DNA of 64,000 nucleotides from Thalia democratica (Eukaryota): assembly GCA_965202585.1 (NCBI GenBank), contig OZ241833.1, forward strand, positions 31,434,001-31,498,000, read 5' to 3'. Positions 42,601 through 61,900 of this stretch are shown in pieces. How positions within the stretch are numbered: position 1 is the first letter of the stretch; each line of letters starts with the position of its first letter. The notes under the pieces are model-generated. The model searched no databases, had not been told where the DNA came from, and was given only the letters and a program-made list of their open reading frames with translations. A program made the translations under genes and the position numbers.

Positions 42601-43150
42601 GTTTTTACTGATAGGAAAAAAATTAAACTTGCATAATCAATTTGCTATTTTCTATTACTTTAAAAATCTAAGTTTTTCTGAAAAATATCTACAATATTTG
42701 TAGTTCAATAAATATACAAAACAACAACTAATAATCTATCACAAACAAATTACATTAAATAAGTAAAAACTCAAAATTATCTCTTTAAACAAAAAAAAAA
42801 TTGAATAAATTATATAAAGATGTAAAAAATACGGTCAGACAAAATAAAACGTCTTATAAAACACAAAAAAAAAGTTTTTAATCATAATATAAGACTAGCA
42901 AACAAAAATAAATGTAACCATGGCAACCAACCTTTACGGTGCAGGGGTAACTCCCCGCCCTGATACCCTGACATTTCTCCACCGTCCCCGTCGCCACCAC
43001 GTGGCTGTCCCCCACTTTCCGGTTCAAACCCTCGTCGCGGCACCTCTCCGCTCCCAAACTCGTCATCACCGCGCGTTTCACGTGGGACTTTCCCGAAGCT
43101 GAGAGGAAGACGAAGAGGAGAAGGGACGTGGTTGCGATTGAGCTCTTCAT
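570..43150 (-). CDS. AGRN: Agrin-like basement-membrane proteoglycan, 32 coding exons in window, 3' end beyond position 1
   Basis: Manual exon chain with GT-AG boundaries and matching phases gives 4022 nt of open frame. Domain order NtA, FS/Kazal repeats, 2 laminin-EGF, FS, SG-rich, SEA, LamG is diagnostic of agrin. Confidence 0.9.
1091..1196 (-). CDS. AGRN: Agrin exon 31: laminin-G 1, part 2
   Basis: YIVDKPVPLFSDVEVSDGNWHVVTSSVNRNDFMLK (DGxWH motif); phase 2-0. Confidence 0.9.
3535..3724 (-). CDS. AGRN: Agrin exon 30: laminin-G 1, part 1
   Basis: SPQFGGSSYILY...IKVKFAFKTFDLHGLLFH...EEGRVVY; phase 1-2. Confidence 0.9.
4514..4537 (-). CDS. AGRN: Agrin exon 29: 24-nt microexon
   Basis: GLEPPYEE; catttttacag| and G|GTGAGA, phase 1-1; could be skipped without a frameshift. 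Confidence 0.68.
6528..6747 (-). CDS. AGRN: Agrin exon 28: canonical SEA domain, part 2
   Basis: IYNQL...IRSVRVTQFSRAPSSGRKVSVDFSLSL...FRTP; phase 0-1. Confidence 0.85.
7413..7540 (-). CDS. AGRN: Agrin exon 27: canonical SEA domain, part 1
   Basis: AAIYRVDGSAIMSL...GSKEHEKYKKKFEDE; phase 1-0. Confidence 0.82.
7791..7815 (-). CDS. AGRN: Agrin exon 26: 25-nt microexon
   Basis: GSKPPSEI; ttttatttacag| and A|GTGAGT, phase 0-1; needed to keep the frame. Confidence 0.8.
8140..8213 (-). CDS. AGRN: Agrin exon 25: acidic Ser-Gly (GAG attachment) region
   Basis: GSGSGSMPPDDDEGDDDEEGSGYP; phase 1-0. Confidence 0.85.
8520..8573 (-). CDS. AGRN: Agrin exon 24: acidic linker
   Basis: PSEEIPPSESDDEDELS; 54 nt, phase 1-1. 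Confidence 0.78.
9087..9213 (-). CDS. AGRN: Agrin exon 23: module 8, Kazal part
   Basis: VCGSDGNNYHSECAMHAMTC...RGKCGFYE; phase 0-1. Confidence 0.92.
9451..9584 (-). CDS. AGRN: Agrin exon 22: FS module 8, first part
   Basis: NGLCKGVTCERADHKC...VCSCITLADCNDQPEDL; phase 1-0. Confidence 0.9.
10095..10253 (-). CDS. AGRN: Agrin exon 21: laminin-type EGF 2
   Basis: CECNVYGSKRQDCNQTDGKCSCIPGVKGDKCDTCPDG...LC; phase 1-1. Confidence 0.93.
10547..10711 (-). CDS. AGRN: Agrin exon 20: laminin-type EGF 1
   Basis: CDCFWKGTVPNKECNPVTKQCPCLPFVGGLRCDRCVPGYW...ECR; phase 1-1. Confidence 0.93.
13290..13417 (-). CDS. AGRN: Agrin exon 19: module 7, Kazal part
   Basis: EKKELCGSDGVTYKSICELNKSSC...HEGSCSTDK; phase 2-1. 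Confidence 0.9.
14127..14247 (-). CDS. AGRN: Agrin exon 18: SGSGSG glycosaminoglycan site and FS module 7, first part
   Basis: SGSGSGELDCYDNEDLCLNGECEF...CVCDFECEL; phase 1-2. Confidence 0.92.
14671..14809 (-). CDS. AGRN: Agrin exon 17: module 6, Kazal part
   Basis: CPETSDDAEVCGTDDRTYKNECQLKKVAC...YEGPCTTE; phase 0-1. Confidence 0.92.
15396..15481 (-). CDS. AGRN: Agrin exon 16: FS module 6, first part
   Basis: NPCEGMKCPIYGTCRNSEFDGRECRCPE; phase 1-0. Confidence 0.9.
15854..15927 (-). CDS. AGRN: Agrin exon 15: module 5, second part
   Basis: SNCKLEQYNCENKKNVKVSSAGTC; phase 2-1. Confidence 0.9.
16151..16280 (-). CDS. AGRN: Agrin exon 14: FS/Kazal module 5, first part
   Basis: TCDGMCSKPGEGC...SCVCVSCQDEYAPVCGSDGNTY; phase 1-2. 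Confidence 0.92.
17842..18078 (-). CDS. AGRN: Agrin exon 13: degenerate FS/Kazal module 4
   Basis: ICLDIRCEKGAKC...PTCTC...PLC...EVC...TKC; 237 nt, phase 1-1. Confidence 0.85.
18485..18657 (-). CDS. AGRN: Agrin exon 12: extra SEA-like domain, part 3
   Basis: AEVSASNEPTNWLPGDEYKWAYRRLF...NLYNFFAD; atgacgtcacag|, phase 2-1. Confidence 0.75.
19389..19477 (-). CDS. AGRN: Agrin exon 11: extra SEA-like domain, part 2
   Basis: KLAEKNTKHNQIIKFEIEKVQKGSLVIFY; atattttacag| and AA|GTTTGT, phase 0-2; it resolves the phase mismatch between exons 10 and 12. Confidence 0.72.
21664..21794 (-). CDS. AGRN: Agrin exon 10: extra SEA-like domain, part 1
   Basis: DTTLIHGTFSV...LDSKEFKRTLKRIEKFINL; aaatacag| and |GTTAGT, phase 1-0. 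Confidence 0.72.
22370..22434 (-). CDS. AGRN: Agrin exon 9: module 3, second part
   Basis: YACQTGQELKAVSKEACKSDF; attctcag| and G|GTAAGT, phase 2-1. Confidence 0.88.
23763..23943 (-). CDS. AGRN: Agrin exon 8: FS/Kazal module 3, first part
   Basis: DPCTSYN...CCSDIVCDYDVTKTVCGNDGRSYQSECAMR; phase 1-2. Confidence 0.9.
25257..25406 (-). CDS. AGRN: Agrin exon 7: Kazal module 2
   Basis: SAPSSCGSCGDHTAVVCGSDGTSYRNKCELEKRSC...SAC; phase 1-1. Confidence 0.9.
26687..26770 (-). CDS. AGRN: Agrin exon 6: Ser/Thr-rich linker
   Basis: ESSTYPLLSTIITSSRISTTTAATTTT; cacttttag| and A|GTTTGT, 84 nt, phase 1-1. Confidence 0.78.
26964..27173 (-). CDS. AGRN: Agrin exon 5: follistatin/Kazal module 1
   Basis: DPCLDVLCGYGARC...LCGSDGVTYESECHLKAAQC...FC; phase 1-1. 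Confidence 0.93.
27588..27623 (-). CDS. AGRN: Agrin exon 4: 36-nt Pro-rich linker
   Basis: GKVVPDRPAKPY; ttttttacag| and G|GTGAGT, phase 1-1. Confidence 0.8.
40148..40268 (-). CDS. AGRN: Agrin exon 3: NtA end
   Basis: VEVGDTKIFFLRKFNDKLIMTSSFSHVTLENLEDVDDIVA; cttcag| and G|GTTCGT, phase 0-1. Confidence 0.9.
41156..41290 (-). CDS. AGRN: Agrin exon 2: NtA
   Basis: VWRVLKG...IEVAGFGNKKLCKSN resembles the NtA VWRYLKG/GFGD motifs; ttttttgaag| and |GTGAGT, phase 0-0. Confidence 0.88.
42932..43150 (-). CDS. AGRN: Agrin exon 1: signal peptide and NtA start
   Basis: MKSSIATTSLLLFVFLSASG...HVVATGTVEK...YPCTVK; donor AAG|GTTGGT, phase 0. Confidence 0.88.
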
Positions 43151-43272
43151 TTTTAACTTGTTTGTTCTTCTTGTTGTTGTTTTCAGACTTCAGTTGAATT
43201 TCTTCATGTCTCGTGAATTTAAAATTTATATGCTTTTCGTTTTCGAGCAGTGTTCTTGTGAACTATTTATAG
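43151..43272 (-). other. Spliced 5' UTR part of the first coding exon, with a 5-codon uORF (43190-43207)
   Basis: Acceptor aatttcag| at 43273; ATG AAG AAA TTC AAC TGA lies upstream of the main ATG. Confidence 0.55.
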
Positions 43273-44350: not shown

Positions 44351-46477
44351 TAAACAAAATTGGTGCACGTTTTAAAGCAAAAAGCTACTTATGCTTGAGC
44401 AATACTTTTTCGTTCTAAAAGTAAAATAACCAAAGTTTTGTAAATCAGCTTAAGTAACTAAATTATCAATAACATCGACTTACATCATTTATTACTGATT
44501 AAATTAGTTATATCAGAATGATTCTACCATTATTATAAATATAAGTAGTATAGTTTATCACTACTTTTAATATAATCATTAAAATGTTGTAATACAGTCG
44601 TATCATCACAACTTCTTTTTTTTATTTTTTTTTTTTTCAAGCTGAAAAAAGTATGATAAAATTTGAAAAATCAAATTTTTTTTATAACTTTTTTTTTTTT
44701 TCAATTGTAGCTTTAAATATATATTCACATTAATTCTACCTCATATGAATTAAAGATTGTGCAAAATCTAGTTTCTTCGGCATCTAAACATTTTTTCGGC
44801 TTGACATTTGAACGTAATATAATATATTTGTATAGAAACAAAAATTGCAAAGAATTAATTGATAAAATATCGAGTATACTAACTACTGTTCACGGAAATT
44901 TATTTGTATTAAACTGAACTTACAAGCTTTAATTTTTTCTTTTAAAGTCAACTTGGTATAGTTTGAAACTGCGGTAAAAAAAACTCGAAAGCTCAAAAAA
45001 AAAATTGAAAACTGTAAGAATGGGTACTGAAATAAATAATATTTACACAAAGATCAACTAAAGTTGAGTTTTGAGTTCGAACGTGAGTTTTAAGTTTATT
45101 TTGTTTTTTTTTTCTCTTTTAATCTCGTTTTCATCAAAAGTCCCAAGAAGTCTGTATCAGTTTTAGAAAATTGCAAAAGCAGAAGCCTAACAACAAACAC
45201 TGGTACATTATTTTTCTATTCGAAATTATTTAATTTTTTGATATTTGTTTACCATACCTGTTTCTAGTTTGTAAACGAGTTTAAAAAGAAATTATCTATT
45301 TTAAATCTTAAAACATTTTATATTAGAGTATGTTTCACTGTTAAAGTGTTGGTCAACAACCAAAACACGATTTTGCTTAGGTGTTAAACGATAACTAATT
45401 ATAAAGTTTTTTATTTACTCTTTAGAACGGAATGGCCTATTGGCAGCCTTTTAAAACTAACTAGTCAATTTTATCAGAATAAGTTGCTTGCTTGCCGCAT
45501 TGTATAGAAAAAGTTTTTCGCTTGCCGCAGTTATTCAAAATAACATCAGTAAAAAGTATAAAATAAAATTTGAGACTAAACGTGATGAAATATACAAATG
45601 TTAAATACTAGTTAGAATTACTGTCTACTGTACACCAAATTAAAATATGGGCTACTTGTAACTTAATTATATTATTTTTGATCATACGATACCGAATTTG
45701 GTCCACATTCTCATACTCATGTAAATATTACTAAGTACATTGACTTCTTATAACATGCTGTAAAATAAAACACTATCCTCTTTAAAAACTTACTTAAAAT
45801 ATATAAATAAAGCAAAGAAAATTTGAATCTAAGAAAAGTTATAAAATAAGCACTTTAAAATGTTTCGTAAAGTGAACATTATGTCCTGGACAAGACATTA
45901 AATTGTATTTGTTTTGTGTGATTCGATAACTGACAGTTTTTTGTACACCAAGTTCTTTGACCAAACTTTTTGAGCGCTTACTTTTTTGTCGTGCAATGAA
46001 CAATTTGCATTTATTGATTAAGTTTTAGGGGTTTAAGATTGATTAATAGTAATTAAAGTTTTTATTTGTTAAACTCAATGTATAAACTTTACAATTTCAT
46101 ATAATGTTAAGTAACTATCACGTTTATGCAAGGCAAATCAGTGCATATTTAGTTTCAAAAAGTAATTAATCTATACAATTTAGACTATGAGTTTATTACA
46201 CGAACATTTTTATAAAGTTCTCTTTTTTTTTGAAACAAAAATACTACAGCACTGATAGAGGTAAAATTTAAAGCATACTGTTTTATCATTAGAAGATGAT
46301 TTTTAGTTTAAAGCACAATTATCTAATTAGTTATTCTTCCAAAAATTCCATTTTCCATACTAAATAGTTAAAAAGTATTTTGCTAACTTATTTTAGTTGC
46401 ACCGCGGTAAACAGTTTAACTCTTGTTCTGTTTTTTTTTTTTGCTCAGTTTTTTAAATAAACTCACCGCCACTATAC

Positions 46478-47260
46478 ATCAAAGTGCTGAAAATTCTCAC
46501 CAGTTCTCAGCTGAACTAGAAGTTCATCATACTGCAAATAACTGGGTAACATATTAATATGGAAACAAGAAGACAACTTGCTAAGAAAGTTTATTTAAAA
46601 GCACGCATACCGTTCATGTCTGAAAAAGCTAAGAAAAAAATAATTTTTTAAATCGAACTGTTGCGTGATTTAACTTTATTTTTTAAAAGATGTAAACCTT
46701 AATCTAATAAAAATCGAGAACAGTTGAACGGGGACAAGTCTAATTTGTATAAAATACGCAGGTGTCATGACGATGAGTTGTTTGATTTCATGTTGTACGG
46801 GGATAGGTATGGTTTAAGTAGAAAAGCGGCTAAAATCAACAAAACAAACTTTTCGAGGAACCATTGTTGTTTGTGGTGGTTGTAACTCTTTCGATGAGTG
46901 GAACAATGTTGGAAAGACGTTCTAAGAAACGGTCGATTACGGCCAACATTGTCGAGCGTGGATGCAGTCACAGCTTGGTTTCAACAAACAACAAGATATT
47001 TGTGATGAGTGGGCTTATTTCAAGAGTTGCGAAGTTTAAGACACAAGTTCTTAGAAGTTTGTGTTTGTAAAACAGCAACCTCGTTCTATGAAATTTAATT
47101 TTTTGTGCTAAAACCGGAAACTGTTTTAACGGGCAACAGAGTTGTTGTGCTGAGGAAGAACTCCAAGCAGTATCTGTTTATAGTGTTCATAAAGCCAAGT
47201 GATCAAGAAGTTACAAAAGAAGAGAACAAAATTGCTCGTCTGAAAGTACCTCAAATATTA
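46478..47260 (+). pseudogene. Decayed BACK-Kelch (kelch-like) pseudogene fragment
   Basis: Frame-shifting translation gives KILTSSQL, ELEVHHTANNWVTY*, RRQLAKKVYLKARIPFMS (BACK-like), then FRGTIVVCGG, HSLVSTNNKIFVMSG, SCEV*DTSS*KFVFVKQ, GNRVVVL, LKVPQI (kelch blades); several stops and frameshifts. Confidence 0.65.
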
Positions 47261-50200
47261 AACTTCATTCAGAACGATCGAAGTAATGTTTGCAAACTTA
47301 TTGAAAATAGCTTATGCTTTTTTTTTTGCGTAAAAAGAAGATTTTGCTGGAGCGGTTGTATACCTTAAAACTAGATAGTGCACTAAATCGTTCACGATAA
47401 TTAATTTTTATTTGATTTCAACTCTTTGTGTTTGTTTTTATTAGTCTTTTTCTTTATTTTTATTTGTATTGTTTAAATCATTTGAAAAAATAGTTTTAAA
47501 TTAGAAATATAAACAGTTGGCCCGCAAGAATTTTTTTCCGTTTGAAGACTTTTTTCAGCCCTTATTAAAGTCTGCCCAAAGCTGATAAATGACTTACAAA
47601 ATTCAGCAACCTTTATTCTATAAAAGAAATTTAATAGTAAATATCAAGAAAAAAATAGATCTACCATCTGATAACCAATACAAAAATTAATTTGGTAACA
47701 ATAGTTTCAGTTAATAGTTTACAAAGTTTTAAAAATCTTTGAGTCGATAATAAAATTAACATTAATTAATGATGTTTAACTAACGAAAATTTAAACACAA
47801 ATGGTTACATGGTTACAAAATTTTCTATAAAAAATCTTCTTTAGTTGCAATTCAATTATACTCTTGAGTCTTGACTTCTTTAATTCAAATAGTTTTCAAA
47901 AACTATCAGGAACAAATTTTGTATCAATAGGACTATTTTTAAAATAACATGTCTCTGAAAAATAACTTTACAGCTTTTTAAACTTTGAAACTAAATTATG
48001 TACGGTTTACTATGCAGCTTAGTGAGATACACCAACAACAAGACATAAACGTTTTAAACAACTGAATTATTTATATGCGGAAAAAAAACAGTATCAGTAC
48101 TCAACAGTGTCTTTTAGCGGATAGTTATTCACTCAAAAGTTTTATTTTCTGTGCATTTTTAAAAAATGTTGTCTGGAGATTTTTATACATCATTCAATAT
48201 CGAAACTATTAATTCGGAATCTTTAATTTTGTAAAGCTTTTTTGTAGCGATAAACGTTTAAATGGCTATTTAATAAACTAAAATTCGATTTGAGTCTTAG
48301 AACACAAACTGTTTTATTATTTTATCCAACATGTGTTTCTAAAATAATAAACCTTAATTTTAAAAAACTAAAAACTATTTACAGATTACATAAAAAGAAT
48401 TTTTCTAACTTTATTTATACTATTACCAGAATAATAAAAACTATATTAATTTTATTATTAAAACTTTTTGTTGTTTACACCAACTATTTCCTTTATTATA
48501 TATATTTCTAGTTTTTCATACGTTTTTATAATGCTATAATCTTATCAATTAAGTTAAACAAAAAACAAATATAATATATTCAAAAATACAAATAAAGATG
48601 TAGTAAATCACAACTTACTTAACGAAAAAATAGCACGATGCAGTTTACATCTAAATCTCATAACTGAATATAAATTAAAAAAATATAAAAAGCTATGATA
48701 GAATTTACACATGAAAAGATCTATAGTGTACACATTAGTATGTTATACAATTGAAATAAAATTTTCCAAAGATGGCAATATTAAAAAAAAATAGACTTTA
48801 ATGACAAACTGTAACTTACTTTAAAAAAGAAACTTTAAAAAAAAGTCTAAATTAGTAGCTTGCTTTTAGACTTAGTAAGCACTTTTTTGTTGTTGATAAT
48901 TGTTTAACAGTTAAGCAACTGAATACCTTTGATAGACCCGATGTTTCATATAAATGTTTATCTTATGTTTTTCGAAATAATTTACATTTTCATAACATTG
49001 TTAGCTTTACAACATAAAATAATTGGCCATTTTGTTAAAAAAAGATCATTATTTTGCACTTACGCGTTTCTTAAACACAAGTAACTGTACCTTGTACGAG
49101 AGTTTGAATATAACGTTTGAAAAGTATACTTTACTAAGTAGTAATGCAGTTACAAAGTACTAACACACTTCTTAATTTACAGACTTTATTAAAACATAAA
49201 GTAACGCTTAAAACTCTGTAGACAAAAGTCATAAGCTAGCAGAGTGTTTTCATATTACGTACTACTTTTTATCTTATTAGTTTTAAAATACCTTTTAGTT
49301 TTTTAACACTCACTGATTATTTAAGTTTGTAACATAGTTGCTACGCTTTTAATTTTCAAAATCTAAATATTTGGAAAGATATAGATTTATACTTTTTAAT
49401 CGTCAGGTCTCGACAAATTACGTTATGAAATTAACATTATGCAATAATATTAAGTTTTTTCAAACGCTGTACTTAAAGAAGTTTCATTTATAACAGCTTT
49501 CTATAAAATATTTTCTGCCAATAAGTTCTCTGCTAAGTATCCTAGAATCCAGTTTTCCCAATACGGTACAAACGCAAATTATCCCACTATATTCTGCTGG
49601 TCAAACAGCTTATTTACAAGTTAGGGTTTTTGTCAGAATATTTTTAAACTATATACCGTTGATATAGTTTATAAGTTATCCATAATAAAAATGCCTGTAA
49701 TTTTGTTTTCTTAACTAGATTAAGCTTTTTTTTTGGGAAGTTTTGAATACCTAGTTTAAGTGTGATAGTTTAGTATGTTACACATTTATATTAATAAATT
49801 ATCAATTTTATTTTTAGAGATTAGTCAAATATAAATCAAAATGGTTTATGTGATATTCATAAACACTCAACTAAAAAAGTTTGAGTTGACTTATTGTTAG
49901 ATACACTTAAGAAATGTCTTAAGTTGCTGTTGTTGTGGAAAACTAATGTTTTGAAATGTAAACACCTTTTTGAATTATGTTTTAAAACTGAAATGATACA
50001 CAACTTGAATTATAAAAGGTTTTATAACTTTATTAGTCATTAAACTTTATAGAATTCCAAGAAAGTTAAAAGTTGTGTTTGTTAAACTTTGTCTTCGTGA
50101 AATTTATAAAATCTTATAAAGCTGTTTAAACGCTTCTGTTATTTCGGAAGCTTTTAGTTTCGGTTTTAGTCTTATACAATATTTAGTACTATATTTCGTT

Positions 50201-53200
50201 TACAAGATTATTTTATATCTTACTGAAATATTAGATATCATTTTAGTTATTAAAGTTTTTCATGGTTTATTGTACTGTATATTTTAAAACAATTTTAGCT
50301 TTTATGCATTACAAAACTTTTTGAACACCAATTTTTAATTAACTTTAGTATTAATGATTTATTAAAGTACTCCTATGGTTCAAGAATTTAAATAAAACAA
50401 AGACAATATGTATAGATATAGATATATTATCAAAGAAAAAAAAAACTTGATTAAAGTTCTTAGTTATAAAATTTCGTATAAAGTTTTCAACTAACCATTT
50501 ATTTTTCACAGAAAAAAAAGTTCTGTGTTTACAAAGGGTATATGGCCATACTTATTTTCAGTATATATAGATATGAAATTTTTAAACTAAATTGTTGTTT
50601 TGTGTCTAACAAACTATACTTACGTATGAAAAACAAACAGATGCATCCGTTTTAAAAGCACATAAGTATTTTCAAAATGCACGAAACTAGAAAAATTATA
50701 GTTTTAGTTAAAACAAGAGCTCAACAATTTTAGTAAAAAAAAATATTAATAATGCTTAGTAAATACAAAAGTAAACTTTGTGGGGTATGCAACTCGATGA
50801 CCGAGATGTCTTTTTGTGTATCCAGGTCCTTGAATCAAAAAAATTTTTGAGAAATTTGTTTTTGTTCAATAAACCTCCTTTGTGACTTTATAAAGAGTTA
50901 GGTGGGTTAAACTGTGCCACTAATTTGCATATACCAAAACAGGACTAACAACAACAAGATGTTAATCATGTTACTTTTAGCTTTAGTTTTTTTCAATTTG
51001 TTATATATTTTGTTAAGGTGGATTAAGGGTAAAGGAACAATTGATTAAAATTAAGGAAAATAAATTAAAAACAACACAATTAACATGGTTTAGATGTTAA
51101 GTTATCATGTTTTTAAAAATTTTTTCGACTTATTTGTTTTATTTTTGGATAAGTTTGTATAGGGATAAAAGTGTATAAATCAAAAAACGATGTTTAAAGT
51201 AACATGATTAAAGTTTTAAAGTTTATTGAGAGAAAAAAAAATCGCTCAAAGTATTTGATCCTACGACCTGGTGTAGGTAGAACCTTTCAGTTAACGAGTC
51301 GCACACCACGAATATCTTTCACAAGATTTTTGAAAACACCAAATTTAAACACAAAAATTATCAAAATTCATACTAAGTTGAGCATAAACGTGATATTTCT
51401 AAATAAAATTTTGCAAAAAAAATTTAAAGCTACAAATGTAAATGTTTAAAAGCTGTAAATTATGGATAGTACTGGTCATAATCTAGCAAGCATTGAGAAC
51501 TTAAGAGTTGAAATTCTTAAAATTTTTTAATTAACTTTTATTATTGTTGAATTTTCTAGTGGCAGGAGTGGTAAGTATATATATTGCTAAGTTGTTAAAA
51601 CAAGAAAGTATATTTTCTGTTTTGAATTTAAAAGAGTGGAAAAAGTTATGCTAAAACCTATACAGAAATCAAAATATAAAAGTTTATTTTCCTTTTTAAT
51701 ACTTTAACGCTAAATAAAGCTGAAGCACCAAAATTTAATATATTAAATAACCAAGTATCCTACAAGTTTTGAAGTTAAACTGCGAACCTTAAAAAATGTA
51801 GAAGAAACTAAAGTTTGACTTCTAAAACTGCTTTAACCTAACAAGCTTATACAAACTTAAGTTAAAGCTAATGAAAAGTTTAGTTTATTATAAAAAGCTT
51901 AAACTTCAAAAATTTAGCAACATAATGTTTAATTAAAAGCTTTAATGATAAATTTTTTATCTTTATCCAGCAAAAATGTCTAAAATATGTCCTGTAATTA
52001 TTTAGGTTAGTAGCTTTAAAAGAAGGGTCAGCAGACTGCGGCCCGCGATGTACTTTTCAGCTAAATACATGCTTGAAAAAAAAATAATTGTGATAAAAAA
52101 TAAAAATTAGGACAAAAAATAATTACTAATGCTTATGTTTGTTAATTTGATTACATTTTTAGTTTACTGTGTTTTTTAAAAACTACTTTTATACTTTTTT
52201 TCAACAACTGCGATCGAAGGAATTTTTTTTTATATTGCGCGCTTTTTATAGAAAAATTGGATTTTTGCTTATAAAATACTGTCGCCCCTTGTTTAGTATA
52301 AGTAATTTTGGTTAAACGATTGTTTATCACGTAACAAAAACGTTTTTCGTACGCAATTGAGGTCCTGTCAAGCAATTGGTTTTTAGTTTGTTTTTAATGA
52401 TTCGTAATTTTACTAACAGTTAGCGTAAAATATCAGTATTTTTATTTTAAATTTTAATTACCATTCAATTTAACTATGACTTTGTTTAATTTTTTTATAA
52501 CATATAGTTTGTAAATTATAATGACTTTGTACAACTCTTTACCTTTAAATGTTTTAAACTTATAGCATTTTTGATGTAGTAAAAATTATTTGAAAGTTAT
52601 CATTTCAATTTAGTACTATAAAAACTGTATTTTAATAAATTTTATTTAAAACTAATTTTAATTAAATGTTGATTATATTCTATACACAAGTACACAAGAC
52701 TATTTTTTATAACCTTGTATGTTTGTTCTAAAGTAGACATCAAACCTTGTAAGACAATTTTAAATTGCTTTATTCAGTCGACAGTTTAAAATTTGCAAGT
52801 AGTAAACTTCAAACTTAATGTTTCTTTTCCTTTAACAAACATTTAACAAAATTTTTACGTTCAGCTGTTTTTTGTTTTGTTTAAAATAAATAAAAAATTC
52901 TCCTTATTAAAGCAAAGATGTTTTTTTATAATCATATGTTTAATTTTAAGTTTAAATAAAATCAAACTTTTTGTTATGTTAATAGAACACTATCTTTAGA
53001 TCAAAATACTCATTTAAAGACTTTACTGAAACTAAATTTTATTTAGTTACTGCAAACTTTTTTCTAGTCAAGGAAACAATTAGGTTACTTCATAAATGCA
53101 AGGTAAACATGTAATTTTGGGAAAAAAAAACAGCAGTTTAAAAAGCAGCTGAACCAGTCGAGTTTCAATTTAGTTTTATCGAAGTTGTTAAAGAAAAGGG

Positions 53201-53242
53201 TTTATAATACCAACTCGATCATTGGACCACAAGCTTTCGGTA

Positions 53243-53285
53243 GACTGAGACCGGTTTCGTCCTGATAAGGACTCATCAGTCAGTC
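53243..53285 (-). ncRNA. Minimal type I hammerhead ribozyme, intact core
   Basis: GACUGA-CUGAUGA-GUCCU-UAUC-AGGAC-GAAA-CCGG-UC-UCAGUC: stem I GACUGA/UCAGUC, core CUGAUGA and GAAA, 5-bp stem II, GUC cleavage triplet. Confidence 0.85.
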
Positions 53286-53546
53286 ACAACCGAAAAACTT
53301 GCAGTCTTCAATCTACAAACGGTTTATACATGCAAGCATAAATAAACCTGTTCTGCAGACTTGTGGTGATGTTTATGTTGATTGTATTAAATACGAGCGT
53401 ACCAGCTGTCTTGCCTTGTGGACAATGTAGTGATGGTTGCACGGCAAAAGACAATGCTGATGTCACTGAACAATGCCAGCAATCGGTTGCTTCATGCTTG
53501 CATGTCTAAACCGTTTTAGATTGAAGACTGCAAGTTTTTCGGTTGT

Positions 53547-53589
53547 GACTGACTGATAAGTCCTAATCAGGATGAAACCGGTCTCAGTC
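53547..53589 (+). ncRNA. Minimal type I hammerhead ribozyme copy with mutated core
   Basis: GACUGA-CUGAUAA-GUCCU-AAUC-AGGAU-GAAA-CCGG-UC-UCAGUC: G8A substitution and a G-U pair at the base of stem II. Confidence 0.7.
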
Positions 53590-56500
53590 TACCGAAAGCC
53601 TGTAGTCTGATGATCAAATTAGTATGAACAACCCTTTAGTTTAACTTGAGCTTGTCTCACGACATACGAAAGTCCAGGCTTCTGCCCTGCAGAATTATTT
53701 CGCCGATGTTTATGTTGACTTTATTAAAGGAGGATTAAATTTGTTATTGTTGATGTCTTAGCACTTTTCTTCGTAGGTTACACCAAGGCTCAAAAGAAAA
53801 TAAAGAGATGTGTTTTTTTATACATTATGTATAAACCTTACACGTATACAGCTATACTGTGTATAAACATCATAAAATAAAATAAAAACAAAACTGTAAA
53901 TACAAAATCGTATTTACTTATATTGTTCATGTTTACCAATGCAAGTTTACACGACTAAATGTTATCATTATCTTATTTTGTCATGAAAAACCGTTTTTAC
54001 GTATCATTTAAGTGTAAATAAACAAATAAAATCATTTTTAATGGCCTTTAAACCACATGTAATTTAAAACATATATTCTAATGACATTTTTACCACAAAG
54101 TTATTTCTCCTTAAATAAGTACATGTTGTACTTTGTTCAATATGTGCTTAATTAAATATATAATTTTAAAGCACTTGTCATGTCACTAAGATTAGCAAGC
54201 TATTACTTATGCCCTCTATTTAAAATAGATTGTTATGTCATAATTTGAAACTTCCCATGCACTTACATATTTCAATGTAATTATAATCTTTAAAGCTTTT
54301 TTTTCAGGTCTAATATACGATAAAGTATTTTTATTAAGCAAAGCATAACAAACAGTAATTATGAGACTCTAGAAAATAACAAAAATTCTAGAGAAACTAA
54401 TGCAATAATTGTTCATGGTTTCAACACAACTTTTTTGTTAGCTAATTTTTTACTACCATAACTTAACTTTGATACAAACTTTAAAAAATCAACTAAATTA
54501 CACAGTATATATTAACTAACTTGTAATTTAAAATCACTATGAATACTAAAAGTATTTTGTATATTTTTTTCTACGATTGTTTTTTGTTGAACATAATATT
54601 GTAGATGTTCTTTTAGATGTTTCTTTTTCACTCAGATTCAAGAAAATACAACAATAAACAGTGTTTTAAACACTCAACTTTTCATTTTTTTGAAAATTGG
54701 TTATCAAAAAAAAACCATAGTGTTTATAAACTTGTGTTTTTTTAGTTTGTCAGATATCACATATACATTGTTTTCTTGCACAAATAAAAACGTTGACTGA
54801 TACTAACTGCTTATTAGAAGTTTTGTTATAAGATAAATGCTAGATTCCATCTTAAAAATCAGCTACTAGCAAGTATGCCGTAGTTACTTGAAACAATAAT
54901 CTGGCGTACAAAAATCAGAAAGTCTTTAAATTGATTGATTTAGTGCTCAAACAAGTTCAGAGTTTTTGTCACAAAGTCGAAACGACGTTACAAACTAGAT
55001 AGAGGTTTTAAACAAAAGGCTTAGCTGGGCCTCCAGCTAAAACGAACACAAGCATCTGTTATTTTATGAAAATAATTTATTTTAAAAAAACAGCGCAAAA
55101 ATAATTTAATAGATACCACGTTGTTATATGTATATTGTATTGAATCATATTTACTACATTATATAGATTATATTTTTGTATTTTGCATCTTTTATTATAT
55201 ATTATATTATTATTGCACTGTTGAACTAGTATATACGACTCTAATAACTTTAATTTTGTACAGCTCTTTTGCTTAAGTTATTAAATGAATTAAAGTTAAC
55301 TATTTTAGTTTATTTTTAATTCTTTTATTTTTCTTATATTTGGTCTTTAGATAGTTTATAAAAGTTCTGAAAAACTTTCTAAAAATAAAATTTTCATATT
55401 TTTAAAATTAAGTTAATAAAGACAACTTATTAAAGTAAACATTAAACCTTGTGAGACTGTCAAAATGCTTATTGTTGTACAATATAAAAATAACTTGATA
55501 ACAAACTGCTTCAAACTAAATTAAAAAATAATTTATACTATTATTGCACACACTTTACTTGATTTATAGCAACGGCTAATGTGTTTAATACAGTAAGTTT
55601 TTAGTTGTTTAAAAAAAAACTAACTTTGTCACACAAGAAATGCATCTATTTTAGACTTTTGTGTTCTCATTGTTATTTTTACAACGTGTACAACTGGATC
55701 ACATAAAATCATTATGTACGGACTTTTGTGGCAAATTCATGTTTAAGAAGATAACACTAGTTTGCCCAAAAAAGATTGTTGCTTTAGTTGTAAAGAAAAT
55801 GCTTGGTCAACTTGCTTGCTATGACAAACAATTTAAAAAGTTCCTAACTGAACAGGGTTTCACTTTTCACAGTTTGTTGTTTTTTGCATACTTTACAAGT
55901 TTTTGTTTTAAGTGTTTTAATTTGAATCTAAACAATAACAATATAAACAATATTAATTACATTGAAAAATAAGGTACCATCTCCACAGTTTTATATTTTA
56001 ACTGGTACGTAAAATTAGTTTTGCATAAGTTAAAATATAAAAAATTGTGAACTAAAGTAATAAACTATTATGTTTCAAGAATTGTTTTATAGTTTACGTA
56101 AATGAAACAAATACAATGTTTCTCGCAATTAGTCTAAAGTTTTAGTTTGAGAGATATTAAAACTATTTTTTGTTGTTTTTAGTTTTCTTTTAAGCGGTCA
56201 TTTTTAAGAGCGTGTTTTACTCACATGTAAGTTTTTTGTTGAGTACACTTTGATCTAAATTTAAATCAACAGTAGTTTCATTGAATTTGAAAACAATATA
56301 GTTACAAATTCTTAACTGTTTCTACGAGTCACAAGCAAATAGCATCATCGTTATTTTTCCAAACATTAATAGAAAAATCGAGGATTGAATAAGTTACTGA
56401 TTCTGGTTTAATTATTTACAACAATGTTAACCAACACTGGGAGACCAGCTGAGCGAATAGAAAAAAGTTTAGTGTTTCTAATTCATTTTAACAATATTCA

Positions 56501-58611
56501 ACATAGTTTTATCTAAATATATAAATTCTCATTTCTGATTTCTTATAATCTAAGGCTTAAAAATGTTATAACTACAACCGCTAAGCAGCGCTAAAGTTAA
56601 GTTTATATAAATTTTAAACTTATAGTAATAAAACAAATAATGTTTACTCCTAACTGTTTTTACATCTTTAAAAGCACTTGCTGATAGTTTTGTTCAAATT
56701 AATAAAATATGTTTGTAGTTTAAAAGCACGTTTTAAGTTAAGTTTTTTTTCTATTGATAACGTTTTATATGTTTTAGCTCAAAAACAGTTTTTTGTTTCT
56801 TTTTTATAGGGTATAACTGATTCACTTACAACTTTAAAAATTAAATAGTTACAAATAAACTAAAAACAAAACTTAAACTTAAATACAAATCAAAAGTGTA
56901 TAAACATCTATGTTGAACTGTTTGGCTGGTAGTTAACTATAAAACTTTTAAAATGTTTAGTAATACCTGAACAATTTTACTTTTGTAAATTATTTAAAGT
57001 TTTGCTCACAAAGTTTTTTAAAATTTCATATCTATAGAAACAAGCATATTTAAGTACATGTTCCCATATTTTATAGTATGCAAGAAAAAAGCTTGAAATC
57101 TAATAATTTTAAGTTCTATTGTCCTAGAATTTTAACCGCATGTTTATAAATAGCGTAATTAATAAAATTACCAATCTTTATATATATTTACCTACGTGTA
57201 GAAAAACATTTTTAAAACAAAAGTAATTACCATCCCTATAAATAAATATTTACTAATTTTGTTATGTTCATTCTGTGCTTAACAAATTCACTTTAAATAA
57301 AGTTTATACAGCTACATACTTTTTATAAATTTCCGGAAAAATTTATAAGCTTACTTAATAATAAAAGAAAACAACAAACAAAAAAAGAATGTTTTGTAAA
57401 TATTGCGACATTGACTGACTTCTATGACGTAATAAACTTTAACTAGTGAAGTAATCTTTTAGTGCTAAAATATTTAATTTTTACACTATTTGTTGCTATT
57501 TAAACTTATACAAAAAACTTTGAAAATAAATGTTATTACACTGTTGTAATTTTTTAGGTTTGTCTCATTTACACTTAAAATTGTATACTTGTGTGTTCAT
57601 TAAATATAGTTTTAAAAGTTAACTATTTGTTTTTATACAACTTCTATTATATAAGTTAAAAATATATAGATTGCTTTACTAGAGTTGAAAACATTATATA
57701 AAAGAGTAATATTAAACTTTTCTAAATATAATATTTCTAAAAACAAAGGTTTTTGCTAACACAATTATAAGCTTTGTGTAATTTATCGAAAGTCGGTAAT
57801 AGAGTTTTAAGACTCAAAATTCTAGTAAAGTAAAATAAATTAATCAGATAATTGAACATTGCTATAAAGTTAAGTGAGCACTTTTACAATGAGATAATTC
57901 AACTGTTTGATAGTTAATCTTTGTTACTTTACATTTAAAATTAAGTTTCAAAATAATTTTACGAATGATCATCAACAAACTAACTTAGTTATAAATTTAA
58001 ATTTCAGTTTATTAGTAATTATAAAATTTGTATATTCAAAACAACTTGTAAAAATTATTGTACAATTTTTTTAGACTATGTACTTTTTAAGCCATATCTT
58101 TATGGTTGATGTTTTTAATTCATAAACATCAGCTGTAATTTTACAGTTTGTAACCAAAAATAATAAAAAGAATTTATATCGTTTTTTGATTTTCACTTTG
58201 CCTTTAACTTTCCTGAACTTATTTTTTACTCTGAAACCGGTTAAAAAAAAATTACATACTATAAACATGTTCTAAAGCCACATACATTTTATTGCAATTA
58301 GGGTTCAAGCTATGCTGAGCTGTTTGGCTAGTAGTGAACTATAATACTACTAAATATTTTAATACAAGTTAATCTTTGTAATTTCGTTTACTTAGTAGTA
58401 TATTTTAACATTGTTTTTACAGCATACTATAACAAAAAAACATATGATATTACAAAATTTACTATTTTTTAAACTTTTTTGTGTATAAAAACCTTTTTTT
58501 TTTTTTTTCAAAATATTCATAGCTTTCAAACTTGATCAAAAAACCTTACGCCCATCGAGCTCTAGAACAATTTTATGCTTCAAGTTTTTAGCTATTTTAG
58601 ATACTTGTATT

Positions 58612-58990
58612 GATGGCTAGGTGTCAAATATGCACGAAAGGTCACTTTTGCTCAAAGACACTTCTTCACGAAGGGTCATTTTTCCACAAATTGAAATTTT
58701 AGCACAAGTTAAAACTTTTTATAATTTATCTTTTTTTTTTAACTGTTACTCTTAACCCGTAACCTTGGTCAGCAAATTTTATTCCTTAATATTATTTACT
58801 TAACGGTTATTGTAACCAATTTTATACTATCACTGTGATCCCTTAGCCTTACCCTTGGTCGATAGTGTTTTTTTATTAGTTCACTTTATTTTTTTTAATG
58901 TTTAATTTTATTTTACTCTTGTGAAAAATTAATCCTCCGTACAAATGTGACCCTTCGTGCAAAAGTGTCTTCGTTTATATTTGACCCATC
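58612..58990. mobile_element. MITE-like non-autonomous element with imperfect TIRs
   Basis: Left GATGG..GTCAAATAT..GACACTT..CACGAAGGGTCA is mirrored at the right end (TGACCCTTCGTGCAAAAGTGTC..ATATTTGACCCATC); T-rich interior; no ORF; no clear TSD. Confidence 0.6.
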
Positions 58991-61900
58991 CCCTGTAGTG
59001 ATGAAGGCTTAAATCATTAATTAAGAAACTAAATTTTTAGCAGATGTTTACATCTTGATTACATATCGAACATCCCTGATACGTTGAACAACTAAATGCG
59101 AAGAAGATTTTTAATAACTTAACTTATGTAAACAAAAAGTTGACAAAAACTAGTTTTTTAAAAACTGTTTCCCAGTTCAAATGTTTATTCCAAACATTTC
59201 TAACGGTTGTTGTAGTAATTTTACTGCAACGCTGTATTCTTTTATTAAGTAACAAAATGCTTTTACACAAATTCATTACAAAGTATAAATATTTTTTGCA
59301 AGCTTTTTACTGTTAGTAGTATATTAATCAATTTATAATACATCCGAAATGCTGTACATATTACGAAATCAGTATTTACTAAAACTGGTTCTTGCTAACC
59401 CTTTATCAAAAGAATAAAAAGAATGTTTAAAATTTGAAAAGTTTATTGAATGTTATTTAGTGGTAATTTTACTTCAAAACATCCCTACAGCTCAAATATT
59501 TACACATGAGGTTTTTAAAACTAGCTATTATACTTGCGTTGTGGTTATTTTACAAGTATTTACTTGCTTGGTTTATTTGTGATTGACTTTGCAGGAGCCA
59601 TAAGTTGTTTGAATTACTAAAAACACAAAAATTTAAAGTGACAATCAGCTTAGAATGTAAATTAAACTGCTGAAATAATTTAAAATTTATCTTTTGATAA
59701 ACTAACTTTATTTTTACTCAGTAATTTTCAAATTAAAAACTCATTAGACTAAAATATCAAAGATAACCGGATAAATTTGTTGGATTTAATTAGCAAAAAA
59801 ATTTTATTTTGTCTATAAGAATGATTGAAGTTTTGATTAAGTATTAAAAGTTGAAATAAATTTCTTATACCGCAAATTGTTTTAGATTTTAATTAGCTAA
59901 TTGATAATAATTTTTATGTAACAAGTATACAGACATAATATTTTCCTAAAAATCTCTCAATTGTTGTGTAAACAGTTTAATGTTGACTTTTATTTCAAAT
60001 TATTAAAATATTCTTGGAAAATAGCATAATCTTATGTAGTAAGTATTGTTATTAATAGCAAAAAAAGTTTTGTAAAAAGTGTGCTGAATTTTGTATCCTC
60101 TAAACTGGTAAAACAACTTGACAATGAAAAACATCACTTTGACTAAACATTCGAGCAAGTTCAAACGGTATTAAGCAGCTTATTCATAATCAACTTGCTT
60201 TACTACCCTTGATTGAATATTTTTATCATTCAGTCGGATTATGGTTTTTACTGTGGTTTCTGTATTTTTGATACGAAGCGCTTAAAGTTAATTTGTTTGT
60301 TTTAGATGAACATTCACTGGCGTATTAAAAGCATATTCGTTTAGTTGTAAACTTTATTGTTGTTTACAGCTTTCAAAAAAAAATCATCAGTAGGTTTATC
60401 TAAGCTTTCATGACAAAAATAGTCTTTTTTTGTAACAGTATTAACTAGTTCAATGGTTCTTTTTTAGTTTTTGTTTTACCGATTTTTTATCAGTTTTTCG
60501 GTCAAAGTAATAATTTTGTCTATAATTAATGTTTATTCTAAGCTATAGTTGTATCTAATTTAGAAATTTATTTTAGCTCAAGCTTTATTGTTAAGTTTAG
60601 ATATTAACGTTATACACGTACTGGTTATTGTAAAATTTCTAAACTCTGCCTAAAAAATTGTAAAAAGATTTTTGAAAGCAAAAGCTAAGTTGACAATTTT
60701 TAAGCATTACTTTATGTTTTGTTTATTTAAACAACACTTTTAATGACAATATCTGTTTGCATTAAAACCGAAAACAAGTACTTAACTGAGTTAAGCTTGC
60801 AAATCGACTGTAGGGTAAACAAAATTATACGAAAAACAAAACAAAATTTAGACAAAGATAAAATTTGTAGAAAGGTAGTTATTTCTATTTATTTTTTGTT
60901 TTAAAGTTTGTGCACGTTTTACAAAAAAAAAGTGTCCATTAGAACAACTTTATTTATTTAATAAAAAAATTTCACCTATGCTCAAGTTTAACCATAATTA
61001 AACTGTAATCTAAATTTTCAACGTTGAGTAGATATGTGAAAAGCTATGTTTCCACTTAAAACTGAAAATATTTACAAAGATAAAAAAATCAACTATTTCT
61101 TACTAAAATATAAAATTCAAAGGCTAAATTGTACTTTGATAAGATTAATGTATGCAATCTGTAGTAATTATAGTAATTATTTCTGAAGTACGTGGTTTTA
61201 TGTGACTGAATTTTTAGTAAATTAATCCATTAGTACTATAATAGAAATATTATCTAATTAAAATTTATATTTAAACTTTGAGGGTATTTGATTTTTTAAG
61301 ACTAAGAACTTAAATGACAAAGCTTTTAATTATGATCTTATACGCAACGGTATTTGTCTAGCACCTAATTATAAATATTGACATTTAAAAGAAACTAAAA
61401 ATATTTCAGAAAATATGTTTTTTAAAAACGTAGCGTGAGATATTTATTTTGTAATTTTTATGGTCAACCACAGTTTTTAATTAAGATAATTGTCACGGAT
61501 ATTCATGTGTCGGAATAAAATACTTTGGTTATTTTTGGCGCCAAAAAATCATCTTAATCAACTCTTGGTTGGTTTTCTAAACATTAGAAATTCCCGATTG
61601 GTGTTTTTTTAATTTAAACTATCTTAGTTAAAACGTTAAAAATAAACTTATACACTTAAACTATTTTACTAAAATATTTTGTTAATAGTATGTCAACATT
61701 TCTAAAAACTTTATTTTTTCCTCTTAAACAACAACTTAGTGTACAATAAATAATTTATTTACTCTTTTTTAAACTACCAAACAAAAACATTTTAACTATA
61801 TTTTCAAAACAAATTTCATGATTTACCGAAGTCAAATTTTTTTTATTTAATGCATCAGCTTTAAGAAAAGAAACTAGTTTTGAATAAAATAAAACATCAA

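What the first reader, a model, noticed from the sequence alone, without database searches (positions are those of the whole stretch)
53243..53285. Intact minimal type I hammerhead ribozyme about 9 kb upstream of agrin, same strand
All core nucleotides are present (CUGAUGA, GAAA, GUC), with a 6-bp stem I extendable through UUUCGGU/ACCGAAA and a 5-bp stem II. Stem III is only 2 bp around the palindrome ACCGGU. This matches the minimal hammerheads described for Penelope-like elements, which cleave efficiently as dimers. Predicted cleavage is 3' of position 53249 on the minus strand.
Basis: partly seen in the sequence, partly recalled or inferred. Interest (0 to 1): 0.85.

Follow-up and report, generated by a model that had tools for sequence, protein, structure and literature searches.

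The report
Hammerhead ribozyme in decayed retrozyme repeat
The hammerhead self-cleaving RNA motif is really there and intact, but it sits in an old, gene-less copy of a mobile repeat that occurs thousands of times in this marine animal's genome, so it is an ordinary example of a known class and probably has nothing to do with the nearby agrin gene.

Summary
On the minus strand, 53285..53243 carries a complete type I hammerhead: CUGAUGA, GAAA, GUC, a 6-bp helix I with a 7-bp extension, and a 5-bp helix II. Helix III is reduced to the palindrome ACCGGU. Cleavage is predicted between 53249 and 53248.

It is not chance. The motif pattern is expected 0.06 times per window. Rfam HH9 scores 30 bits (E 6e-6 locally, below gathering). 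Helix I covaries across independent loci that share the core.

The motif is one part of a 545-bp, GC-richer, ORF-less insertion (53187-53731). A plus-strand copy of about 1.13 units of a ~335-nt repeat carries a core-mutated hammerhead (CUGAUAA). It is joined head-to-head to an inverted, 5'-truncated copy that carries the intact one. This is the insertion anatomy described for Penelope-like elements.

Summed word depth in a DNA run of the organism is about 10^4 times the flank depth. The same 31-nt core lies next to RT + GIY-YIG ORFs in metagenome contigs.

By the published criteria the ribozyme is a canonical metazoan type I (retrozyme, newt or Schistosoma style), not a PLE "min-HHR". At this locus it is probably inert, because a read-through transcript folds into a ~160-bp hairpin. 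The link to agrin (~10 kb away) looks incidental. The scan had already noted similar elements elsewhere in this genome.

The parts
53243..53285 (-). Intact type I hammerhead: helix I 6 bp, CUGAUGA, helix II GUCCU/AGGAC with loop UAUC, GAAA, palindromic ACCGGU helix III, C17 at 53249. Predicted cleavage between 53249 and 53248.
   Evidence: Sequence read; pattern statistics; Rfam HH9 30.2 bits; helix I covariation.
53227..53297 (-). Full extent of the hammerhead, including the internal loop (UGU/U) and the 7-bp closing extension of helix I. This is the span matched by Rfam HH9.
   Evidence: alignment (model 1-77); fold (-25.6 kcal/mol, z -2.8).
53187..53348 (-). Inverted, 5'-truncated copy of the repeat unit (left arm of the palindrome). 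It carries the intact hammerhead.
   Evidence: 162 nt, 87.7% identical to 53485-53645 in reverse complement; loose ends at 53327 show that the family continues as in the right copy, so this copy is truncated.
53349..53731 (+). Main copy of the repeat, about 1.13 units of a ~333-337-nt ORF-less unit. Its start is repeated at its end: 53353-53391 matches 53687-53728.
   Evidence: direct repeat, spacing 337; (depth falls to single-copy level after 53731).
53547..53589 (+). Second hammerhead copy, core-mutated. G8 to A at 53558 gives CUGAUAA. C to U at 53573 turns the helix II closing pair into G-U. One change lies in loop 2.
   Evidence: Rfam HH9 26.0 bits. The family-majority letters at 53558 and 53573 restore the canonical core.
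42881..43189 (-). Context only: first coding exon of the agrin-like gene (signal peptide followed by the start of the NtA domain). The motif lies about 10 kb upstream on the same strand.
   Evidence: NtA 22.9 bits, just under the 25.1 cut-off; Kazal at 9076-9312; many Kazal/follistatin-like and laminin-EGF-like Cys-rich exons on the minus strand.

Best explanation
The motif is the hammerhead of one decayed copy of a very abundant, non-coding, ~335-nt retrotransposon-like repeat. The repeat is an animal 'non-LTR retrozyme', that is, a non-autonomous derivative of Penelope-like elements.

The locus (53187-53731) is a single PLE-style insertion. A plus-strand copy slightly longer than one unit is joined head-to-head at its 5' end to an inverted 5'-truncated copy.

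In active members of such families, multimeric transcripts carry two or more hammerheads. Two of them pair through the palindromic ACCGGU to form a double hammerhead, cleave after GUC, and release unit-length RNAs with 5'-OH and 2',3'-cyclic phosphate ends. A tRNA ligase can circularise these RNAs, and a PLE reverse transcriptase/GIY-YIG endonuclease supplied in trans copies them back into DNA.

Shown here: the motif, its covariation, the repeat anatomy, the abundance, and the same core beside RT + GIY-YIG ORFs elsewhere. Inferred from the literature: cleavage as a dimer, circularisation, and mobilisation by PLEs.

At this particular locus the ribozyme is most likely inert. Each strand carries only one sense hammerhead, the partner copy has a dead core, and a read-through transcript would bury the intact motif in a ~160-bp hairpin. 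Its position upstream of agrin is incidental.
For: Motif and significance.

Helix I covaries in 9 loci that were selected only by the core plus helices II and III. 82.9% of cells are paired against 71.2% in shuffles (0 of 500 shuffles reach it), 6 of 7 helix I pairs change on both sides, and slid controls give 26-49% (stems listed).

Anatomy: inverted arms 53187-53348 / 53485-53645 at 87.7% identity. Unit period 333-337 nt with terminal redundancy. No ORF of 60 aa or more overlaps the 53187-53731 insertion in a 14-kb scan (46000-60000). GC is 41% against 24-25% in the flanks.

Abundance: in DNA run X1, which matches the flanks with 0 differences at depth 35-38, summed word depth rises to 2e4-6.7e5 exactly between about 53187 and 53731. 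About 6,700 contig pieces are laid, mostly 90-95% alike. A 'goes back 316' joint indicates tandem arrays elsewhere.

The family-majority letters give an intact core at both copies, so the family hammerhead is conserved and the right copy is a private decay.

PLE link: the same 31-nt core lies about 750 nt downstream of ORFs with RVT_1 + GIY-YIG in L001 and L009. PMC8557442 (section 6) describes exactly this insertion form: partial tandem plus an inverted 5'-truncated copy adjacent at the 5' end.

Retrozyme features (170-400-nt units, type I HHR, low GC, dimer-dependent cleavage with a short palindromic helix III): PMC7229834 and PMC4209133. Retrozymes as PLE derivatives: bioRxiv 10.64898/2026.07.22.740005.

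Local inertness: the monomer MFE (-23.9 kcal/mol) is not the hammerhead fold (-20.7, or -15.0 with the single helix III pair). The 581-nt minus-strand RNA folds as a long hairpin of -289.7 kcal/mol, z -24.
Against: - No copy of this particular family was seen next to an RT/GIY-YIG ORF. The metagenome PLEs share only the ribozyme core, not the flanks, and the rest of the genome could not be searched.
- Only about 1.13 units are present here, not a tandem array.
- No target-site duplication could be found.
- The inverted copy ends at a different unit position (equivalent to 53645) than the main copy (53728), which the simple PLE model does not predict.
- Transcription, cleavage and circles are untested. 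Family contigs in two marine metatranscriptomes could come from contaminating DNA of a 10^4-copy repeat.
- Summed word depth is not a true copy number.
Confidence: 0.8

Rival explanations
1. Solo pLTR or 3'-terminal remnant of an autonomous Penelope-like element whose ORF was never copied (extreme 5' truncation) or was later deleted, rather than a member of a dedicated non-autonomous retrozyme family.
For: The same hammerhead core occurs beside RT + GIY-YIG ORFs. PLE insertions are typically heavily 5'-truncated, with inverted or tandem pieces (PMC8557442). Earlier scan notes report PLE relics in this genome (leads only).
Against: The plus-strand copy repeats its own start after 333-337 nt, which indicates a short unit rather than the end of a 3-4-kb element. 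A contig joint that goes back 316 nt points to tandem arrays of that unit. There is no RT/EN remnant in the window. The hammerhead architecture is the canonical retrozyme type, whereas the autonomous PLEs in L001 and L009 have only a 4-bp helix I.
Confidence: 0.12
2. A domesticated ribozyme that processes an upstream agrin transcript or alternative 5' exon, as proposed for the intronic HH9/HH10 hammerheads of amniotes.
For: It lies on the same strand as agrin, about 10 kb upstream of the first coding exon. The core is intact. The best Rfam match is HH9.
Against: It is one of roughly 10^4 family copies. The insertion differs from the family majority at about 4-7% of positions, and its partner copy has lost G8, as expected for neutral decay. 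At that divergence an intact 43-nt motif is expected by chance in roughly one copy in ten (inference). The fold-back would block folding. The HH9 score is 22 bits below gathering. No conservation across species was shown.
Confidence: 0.03
3. The functional unit is the palindrome itself. A transcript through 53187-53731 forms a long hairpin that is diced into small RNAs against the repeat family, and the hammerhead is only a passenger.
For: A ~160-bp hairpin with 88% pairing, -290 kcal/mol, z -24.
Against: The inverted arrangement is a routine by-product of PLE-type insertion (PMC8557442). There is no small-RNA or transcription evidence. The arms have drifted to 12% divergence without compensatory changes.
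Confidence: 0.04
4. A chance occurrence of the hammerhead consensus in AT-rich intergenic DNA.
For: Rfam reports nothing at gathering thresholds.
Against: 0.06 matches are expected per window. A second copy, a huge family, a conserved family-majority core and helix I covariation all argue against chance.
Confidence: 0.01

Closest known systems
Animal non-LTR retrozymes (Cervera & de la Pena 2020, PMC7229834), including newt/axolotl satellite hammerheads and Schistosoma Sm-alpha
   Same: - Type I hammerhead with a 6-bp helix I plus an internally looped extension.
- Helix II GUCC/GGAC with an A/U-rich loop.
- Helix III of a single pair capped by a palindromic tetraloop, implying dimer action.
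- ORF-less unit of about 335 nt, within the 170-400-nt range.
- GC 41-43%, below 45%.
- Very high copy number.
   Different: Here there are only about 1.13 units plus an inverted fragment, not a tandem array. Circular or linear unit-length RNAs were not demonstrated. The loop 1 / loop 2 tertiary contacts were not verified.
Penelope-like elements and their pLTR 'min-HHRs' (Cervera & de la Pena 2014, PMC4209133; Craig et al. 2021, PMC8557442)
   Same: Palindromic helix III (ACCGGU) and a G10.1-C11.1 pair. The identical 31-nt core sits beside RT + GIY-YIG ORFs in L001 and L009. The insertion anatomy is a partial tandem with an inverted 5'-truncated copy at the 5' end. PMC4209133 also notes pairs of hammerheads 100-700 bp apart on opposite strands.
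   Different: There is no RT/GIY-YIG ORF here. Helix II is 4-5 bp, not 7-8. Helix I is 6 bp plus a closing stem, not 4-5 bp with an undefined loop. [quoted passage not shown]
Rfam Hammerhead_HH9 (RF02275), intronic amniote/Xenopus type I hammerhead
   Same: Best-scoring Rfam family. It shares the core, the 6-bp helix I, the UAC bulge on the 3' strand of helix I, and a closing stem.
   Different: The score of 30.2 bits is well under the gathering score of 52. The 5-nt helix III loop is missing. The context is a repeat rather than a conserved intron.

Membership tests
Hammerhead ribozyme, type I | Conserved core C3-U4-G5-A6-N7-G8-A9, G12-A13-A14, and cleavage triplet N-U-H with H not G | tested here: met
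   CUGAUGA, GAAA and GUC are read. Pattern expected 0.06 times per window.
Hammerhead ribozyme, type I | Three helices around the core, with helix I open-ended; G10.1-C11.1 and A15.1-U16.1 pairs | tested here: met
   Helix I has 6+7 bp and helix II 5 bp starting with G-C. A15.1-U16.1 is present. Helix III is otherwise only the palindrome. Helix I covaries across loci.
Hammerhead ribozyme, type I | Score at or above an Rfam hammerhead gathering threshold | tested here: not met
   No hit at gathering. HH9 scores 30.2 against 52 bits. The deficit is mainly the missing helix III loop.
Hammerhead ribozyme, type I | Mg2+-dependent self-cleavage 3' of C17 | not testable with these tools
   Needs in vitro transcription of monomer and dimer constructs.
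PLE min-HHR (PMC4209133) | [quoted passage not shown] | tested here: not met
   Helix II is GUCCU/AGGAC (5 bp, or 4 bp + 6-nt loop) and follows A9 directly.
PLE min-HHR (PMC4209133) | [quoted passage not shown] | tested here: not met
   6 bp, then a UGU/U internal loop, then a 7-bp closing stem. By contrast L001 and L009 have 4 bp.
PLE min-HHR (PMC4209133) | Absent or very short palindromic helix III | tested here: met
   ACCGGU; the duplex of two copies is -8.3 kcal/mol.
Penelope-like element (autonomous) | ORF with a telomerase-like RT plus a GIY-YIG endonuclease | tested here: not met
   No ORF of 60 aa or more overlaps 53187-53731. tblastn of the L001 and L009 RT/EN proteins against the window gives E of 0.7 or worse.
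Penelope-like element (insertion anatomy) | 5' truncation, partial tandem (pLTR) and an inverted 5'-truncated copy abutting the 5' end | tested here: met
   compared with PMC8557442 section 6.
Animal non-LTR retrozyme (PMC7229834) | ORF-less unit of about 170-400 nt, GC below 45-50%, carrying a canonical type I hammerhead | tested here: met
   Unit of 333-337 nt, GC 0.43, no ORF.
Animal non-LTR retrozyme (PMC7229834) | Tandem repeats, from dimers to multimers, in many genomic copies | tested here: inconclusive
   Only 1.13 units here. Family abundance is about 10^4 times flank depth, and a 'goes back 316' contig joint suggests arrays elsewhere, but the genome itself could not be searched.
Animal non-LTR retrozyme (PMC7229834) | Expression as unit-length linear and circular RNAs | tested here: inconclusive
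   Family contigs occur in two marine metatranscriptome runs and none on the flanks. DNA carry-over of a 10^4-copy repeat would look the same, and contigs give no ends or circles.

The most novel reading that the evidence does not exclude
The head-to-head pair of one live and one dead hammerhead is not just insertion debris. It acts as a hairpin-RNA locus that feeds small-RNA silencing of the 10^4-copy retrozyme family, or as a ribozyme-terminated upstream transcript that affects agrin expression.
Probability: 0.05. Interest if true: 0.45.

Novelty: new member of a known kind. Interest (0 to 1): 0.2.

Why it matters
It matters mainly as annotation. The motif marks a high-copy hammerhead-bearing retrozyme/PLE-derived repeat family in a marine animal genome, and this locus shows the PLE-type inverted plus partial-tandem insertion form on a very short non-coding unit. 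That fits the recent proposal that animal retrozymes are non-autonomous PLE derivatives. It opens no new question, and it should not be read as a regulatory element of agrin.

Tried and rejected
- Rfam at gathering thresholds over the whole window: no hit.
- Search for other family fragments in the window: none beyond the two copies.
- Search for RT/GIY-YIG remnants in the window with the metagenome PLE proteins: none.
- Target-site duplication search at several candidate boundaries: only a 6-nt shared word (TTGTTA), which is at chance level in AT-rich DNA.
- Homology between the window's repeat and the 12 metagenome loci beyond the ribozyme core: none. Those loci support the motif class and its PLE association, not this family's own parentage.
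- The search of earlier findings by sequence: blank.
- RNA evidence: only Logan contigs were available. No read ends, no strand and no circles could be scored, so transcription stays open.
- Chance motif: rejected.
- Agrin-linked domesticated ribozyme: considered and judged unlikely.

Full report
**1. The observation**

The minus strand 53285..53243 reads GACUGA-CUGAUGA-GUCCU-UAUC-AGGAC-GAAA-CCGG-UC-UCAGUC. Every invariant hammerhead position is present:
- C3 to A9 as CUGAUGA, and G12-A14 as GAA;
- the A15.1-U16.1 and G10.1-C11.1 pairs;
- the cleavage triplet GUC, with C17 at 53249.

Helix I has 6 bp. After a small internal loop (UGU on the 5' strand, U on the 3' strand) it continues for 7 more pairs (UUUCGGU/ACCGAAA). 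Helix II has 5 bp. Helix III is only the palindrome ACCGGU. In a single molecule this can form just the A-U pair around a CCGG tetraloop, because a 2-bp stem would leave an impossible 2-nt loop.

**2. Is it more than chance?**

- The core pattern is expected 0.06 times per window in dinucleotide shuffles, and it occurs only here.
- The 43-mer has a second copy with 3 mismatches at 53547-53589 on the plus strand.
- Rfam gives nothing at curated thresholds. A local scan gives Hammerhead_HH9 at 30.2 bits, E 6.2e-6, against a gathering score of 52. The alignment covers the whole model except the 5-nt helix III loop. The second copy scores 26.0 bits.

An independent test came from the JGI metagenome contigs. 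I scanned them for the core plus helices II and III only, leaving helix I unspecified, and got 12 loci. In all but one sequence family the bases flanking the core pair with each other, using different sequences: GACUGA/UCAGUC here, GCGG/CCGC, ACGG/CCGU, GCCUAA/UUAGGU, ACACCA/UGGUGU.

Counted formally on 9 sequences, 82.9% of cells pair against 71.2% in shuffles (0 of 500 shuffles reach the observed value). Six of seven helix I pairs show changes on both sides. Sliding the partner strand drops pairing to 26-49%. The motif class is therefore a real hammerhead, not a consensus coincidence.

**3. What surrounds it**

The motif is part of a 545-bp block (53187-53731) whose GC content is 41%, against 24-25% in the flanks. 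The block has three features.

(a) Arms 53187-53348 and 53485-53645 are inverted repeats, 162 nt long and 87.7% identical. The left arm (minus strand) carries the intact ribozyme. The right arm (plus strand) carries CUGAUAA (G8 to A at 53558), a C-to-U change at 53573 and a loop change.

(b) The 136 nt between the arms is not a neutral spacer. 53353-53391 is repeated at 53687-53728, a spacing of 333-337 nt. The plus-strand copy therefore runs from 53349 to about 53731 and is about 1.13 units of a ~335-nt repeat.

(c) The left arm is an inverted copy whose 5' end is truncated at 53348, abutting the 5' end of the plus-strand copy head-to-head. Loose ends of family contigs at 53327 continue as in the right copy's upstream sequence, which confirms that the left copy is the truncated one.

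Further negatives:
- No ORF of 60 aa or more overlaps the 53187-53731 insertion in a 14-kb scan around it (46000-60000).
- There is no RT or endonuclease remnant anywhere in the window.
- There is no further fragment of the repeat in the window.
- No convincing target-site duplication was found.

**4. Abundance**

Logan contigs of a DNA run of the organism (X1) match both flanks without a single difference at depth 35-38. The summed word depth jumps to 2e4-6.7e5 exactly inside 53187-53731 and falls back to 35 after 53731. About 6,700 contig pieces are laid, most of them 90-95% alike. A second organism (X3) shows the same profile.

This sum is not a true copy number, but it implies a family on the order of 10^4 copies.

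The majority letters of the family restore the canonical core in the right copy (53558 A>G, 53573 T>C). They differ from the left copy only in loop 2 (53264, 53267). So the family ribozyme is conserved, and the two local copies are about 4-7% decayed. That adds up to the 12% divergence between the arms.

A contig joint that 'goes back 316' nt indicates tandem arrays of the unit elsewhere. Other contigs share only 53249-53283 and then diverge, so further families in this genome carry the same core with a different helix I.

Family contigs also occur in two marine metatranscriptome runs. With a 10^4-copy repeat this could equally be DNA carry-over, and contigs give no ends or circles.

**5. Link to Penelope-like elements**

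In metagenome contigs L001 and L009 the identical 31-nt core lies about 750 nt downstream, on the same strand, of ORFs with RVT_1 and GIY-YIG domains. That domain pair defines EN+ Penelope-like elements. A further ORF of 448-475 aa without Pfam matches starts about 200 nt after the ribozyme in L009, L010 and L005, so the ribozyme sits between tandem element copies, as in pLTRs.

The flanks of these loci are not homologous to the window's repeat. They tie the motif class to PLEs, not this family to a particular PLE.

[quoted passage not shown] Cervera & de la Pena also noted pairs of hammerheads 100-700 bp apart on opposite strands (PMC4209133).

**6. Which kind of hammerhead**

PMC4209133 separates two kinds:
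- 'canonical' metazoan type I motifs: helix I 6 bp, helix II 4 bp, interacting loops, and helix III of 1-2 bp with a small palindromic loop;

The window's motif fits the first description on every count. It resembles the newt/axolotl motifs described as a single base-paired helix III capped by a palindromic tetraloop (PMC7229834). Those motifs cleave poorly as monomers and efficiently as dimers.

Together with the ~335-nt ORF-less unit of low GC, this places the element among animal non-LTR retrozymes (PMC7229834). A 2026 preprint argues that these are non-autonomous derivatives of PLE pLTRs (10.64898/2026.07.22.740005).

**7. How it most likely works, and whether it works here**

For the family, the following is inferred from the cited literature. 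Multimeric transcripts bring two hammerheads together. The ACCGGU palindromes pair (the duplex alone is -8.3 kcal/mol) and form the extended helix III of a double hammerhead. Each ribozyme cleaves after GUC. Unit-length RNAs are released and can be circularised by a tRNA ligase. A PLE RT/endonuclease reverse-transcribes and inserts them.

For this locus, the computed results are:
- The monomer's minimum-energy fold (-23.9 kcal/mol) is a misfold. The hammerhead fold is at -20.7 kcal/mol, or -15.0 with the single helix III pair.
- Each strand has only one sense hammerhead, and the other copy is dead.
- A minus-strand transcript across the block folds into a ~160-bp hairpin of -289.7 kcal/mol (z -24) that pairs the intact ribozyme with the antisense of its partner.

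The copy is therefore most likely an inert relic. At about 5% decay, an intact 43-nt motif is expected by chance in roughly one copy in ten (inference), so its intactness does not argue for selection.

**8. Agrin**

The minus strand of 1-43189 carries many Kazal/follistatin-like and laminin-EGF-like exons. Its first coding exon has a signal peptide and the start of an NtA domain (42881-43189). The motif lies about 10 kb upstream on the same strand. Nothing links the two functionally.

**9. Verdict**

This is an ordinary, decayed member of a known class (hammerhead-bearing retrozyme/PLE-derived repeats). The scan had already noted similar elements on other pieces of this genome (s1-291866, s1-279059, s1-311192; s1-271392) and the palindrome itself in this window (s1-301350). 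Interest is low.

Noticed in passing
L001:1-6211 and L009:1-5755 (metagenome contigs): Apparently intact Penelope-like elements in tandem. An RT + GIY-YIG ORF (621-706 aa) is followed after about 750 nt by the hammerhead, and after another ~200 nt by a 464-475-aa ORF with no Pfam match (58% identical between the two contigs). This second ORF may be an uncharacterised N-terminal or ORF1 protein of this PLE lineage.
   Followed up: partly
L004:1-1518 (Trout Bog Lake metagenome contig): Five identical hammerheads on the minus strand within 1.5 kb by a slightly relaxed pattern scan (one search's exact pattern listed four). Start-to-start spacings alternate 607 / 185 / 607 nt. This is a retrozyme-like array with two ribozymes per ~790-nt unit.
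   Followed up: no
window:53249-53283 (from contigs of runs X1, X3, X9, X10): Dozens of contigs share only the ribozyme core and then diverge on both sides into other conserved flanks. The genome therefore holds further hammerhead families with the same core but a different helix I.
   Followed up: no
window:53066-53139 and 53732-53805: In the run of a second organism (X3) the two bins directly flanking the insertion have zero depth, while more distant flank bins are covered. This may be local divergence or a different structure at the orthologous site. An empty-site joint was not among the rows shown.
   Followed up: no
window:1-43189 minus strand: A large agrin-like gene: a signal peptide + NtA exon at 42881-43189, many Kazal/follistatin-like exons (for example 26953-27198, 25228-25425, 16117-16332, 14621-14824, 9079-9315) and laminin-EGF-like exons (10045-10278, 10545-10724).
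   Followed up: partly
L002:194-224: This contig carries a core identical to the majority core of the window's family (loop 2 AAUA), but its flanks cannot form helix I. It is either a decayed copy or a different arrangement.
   Followed up: no
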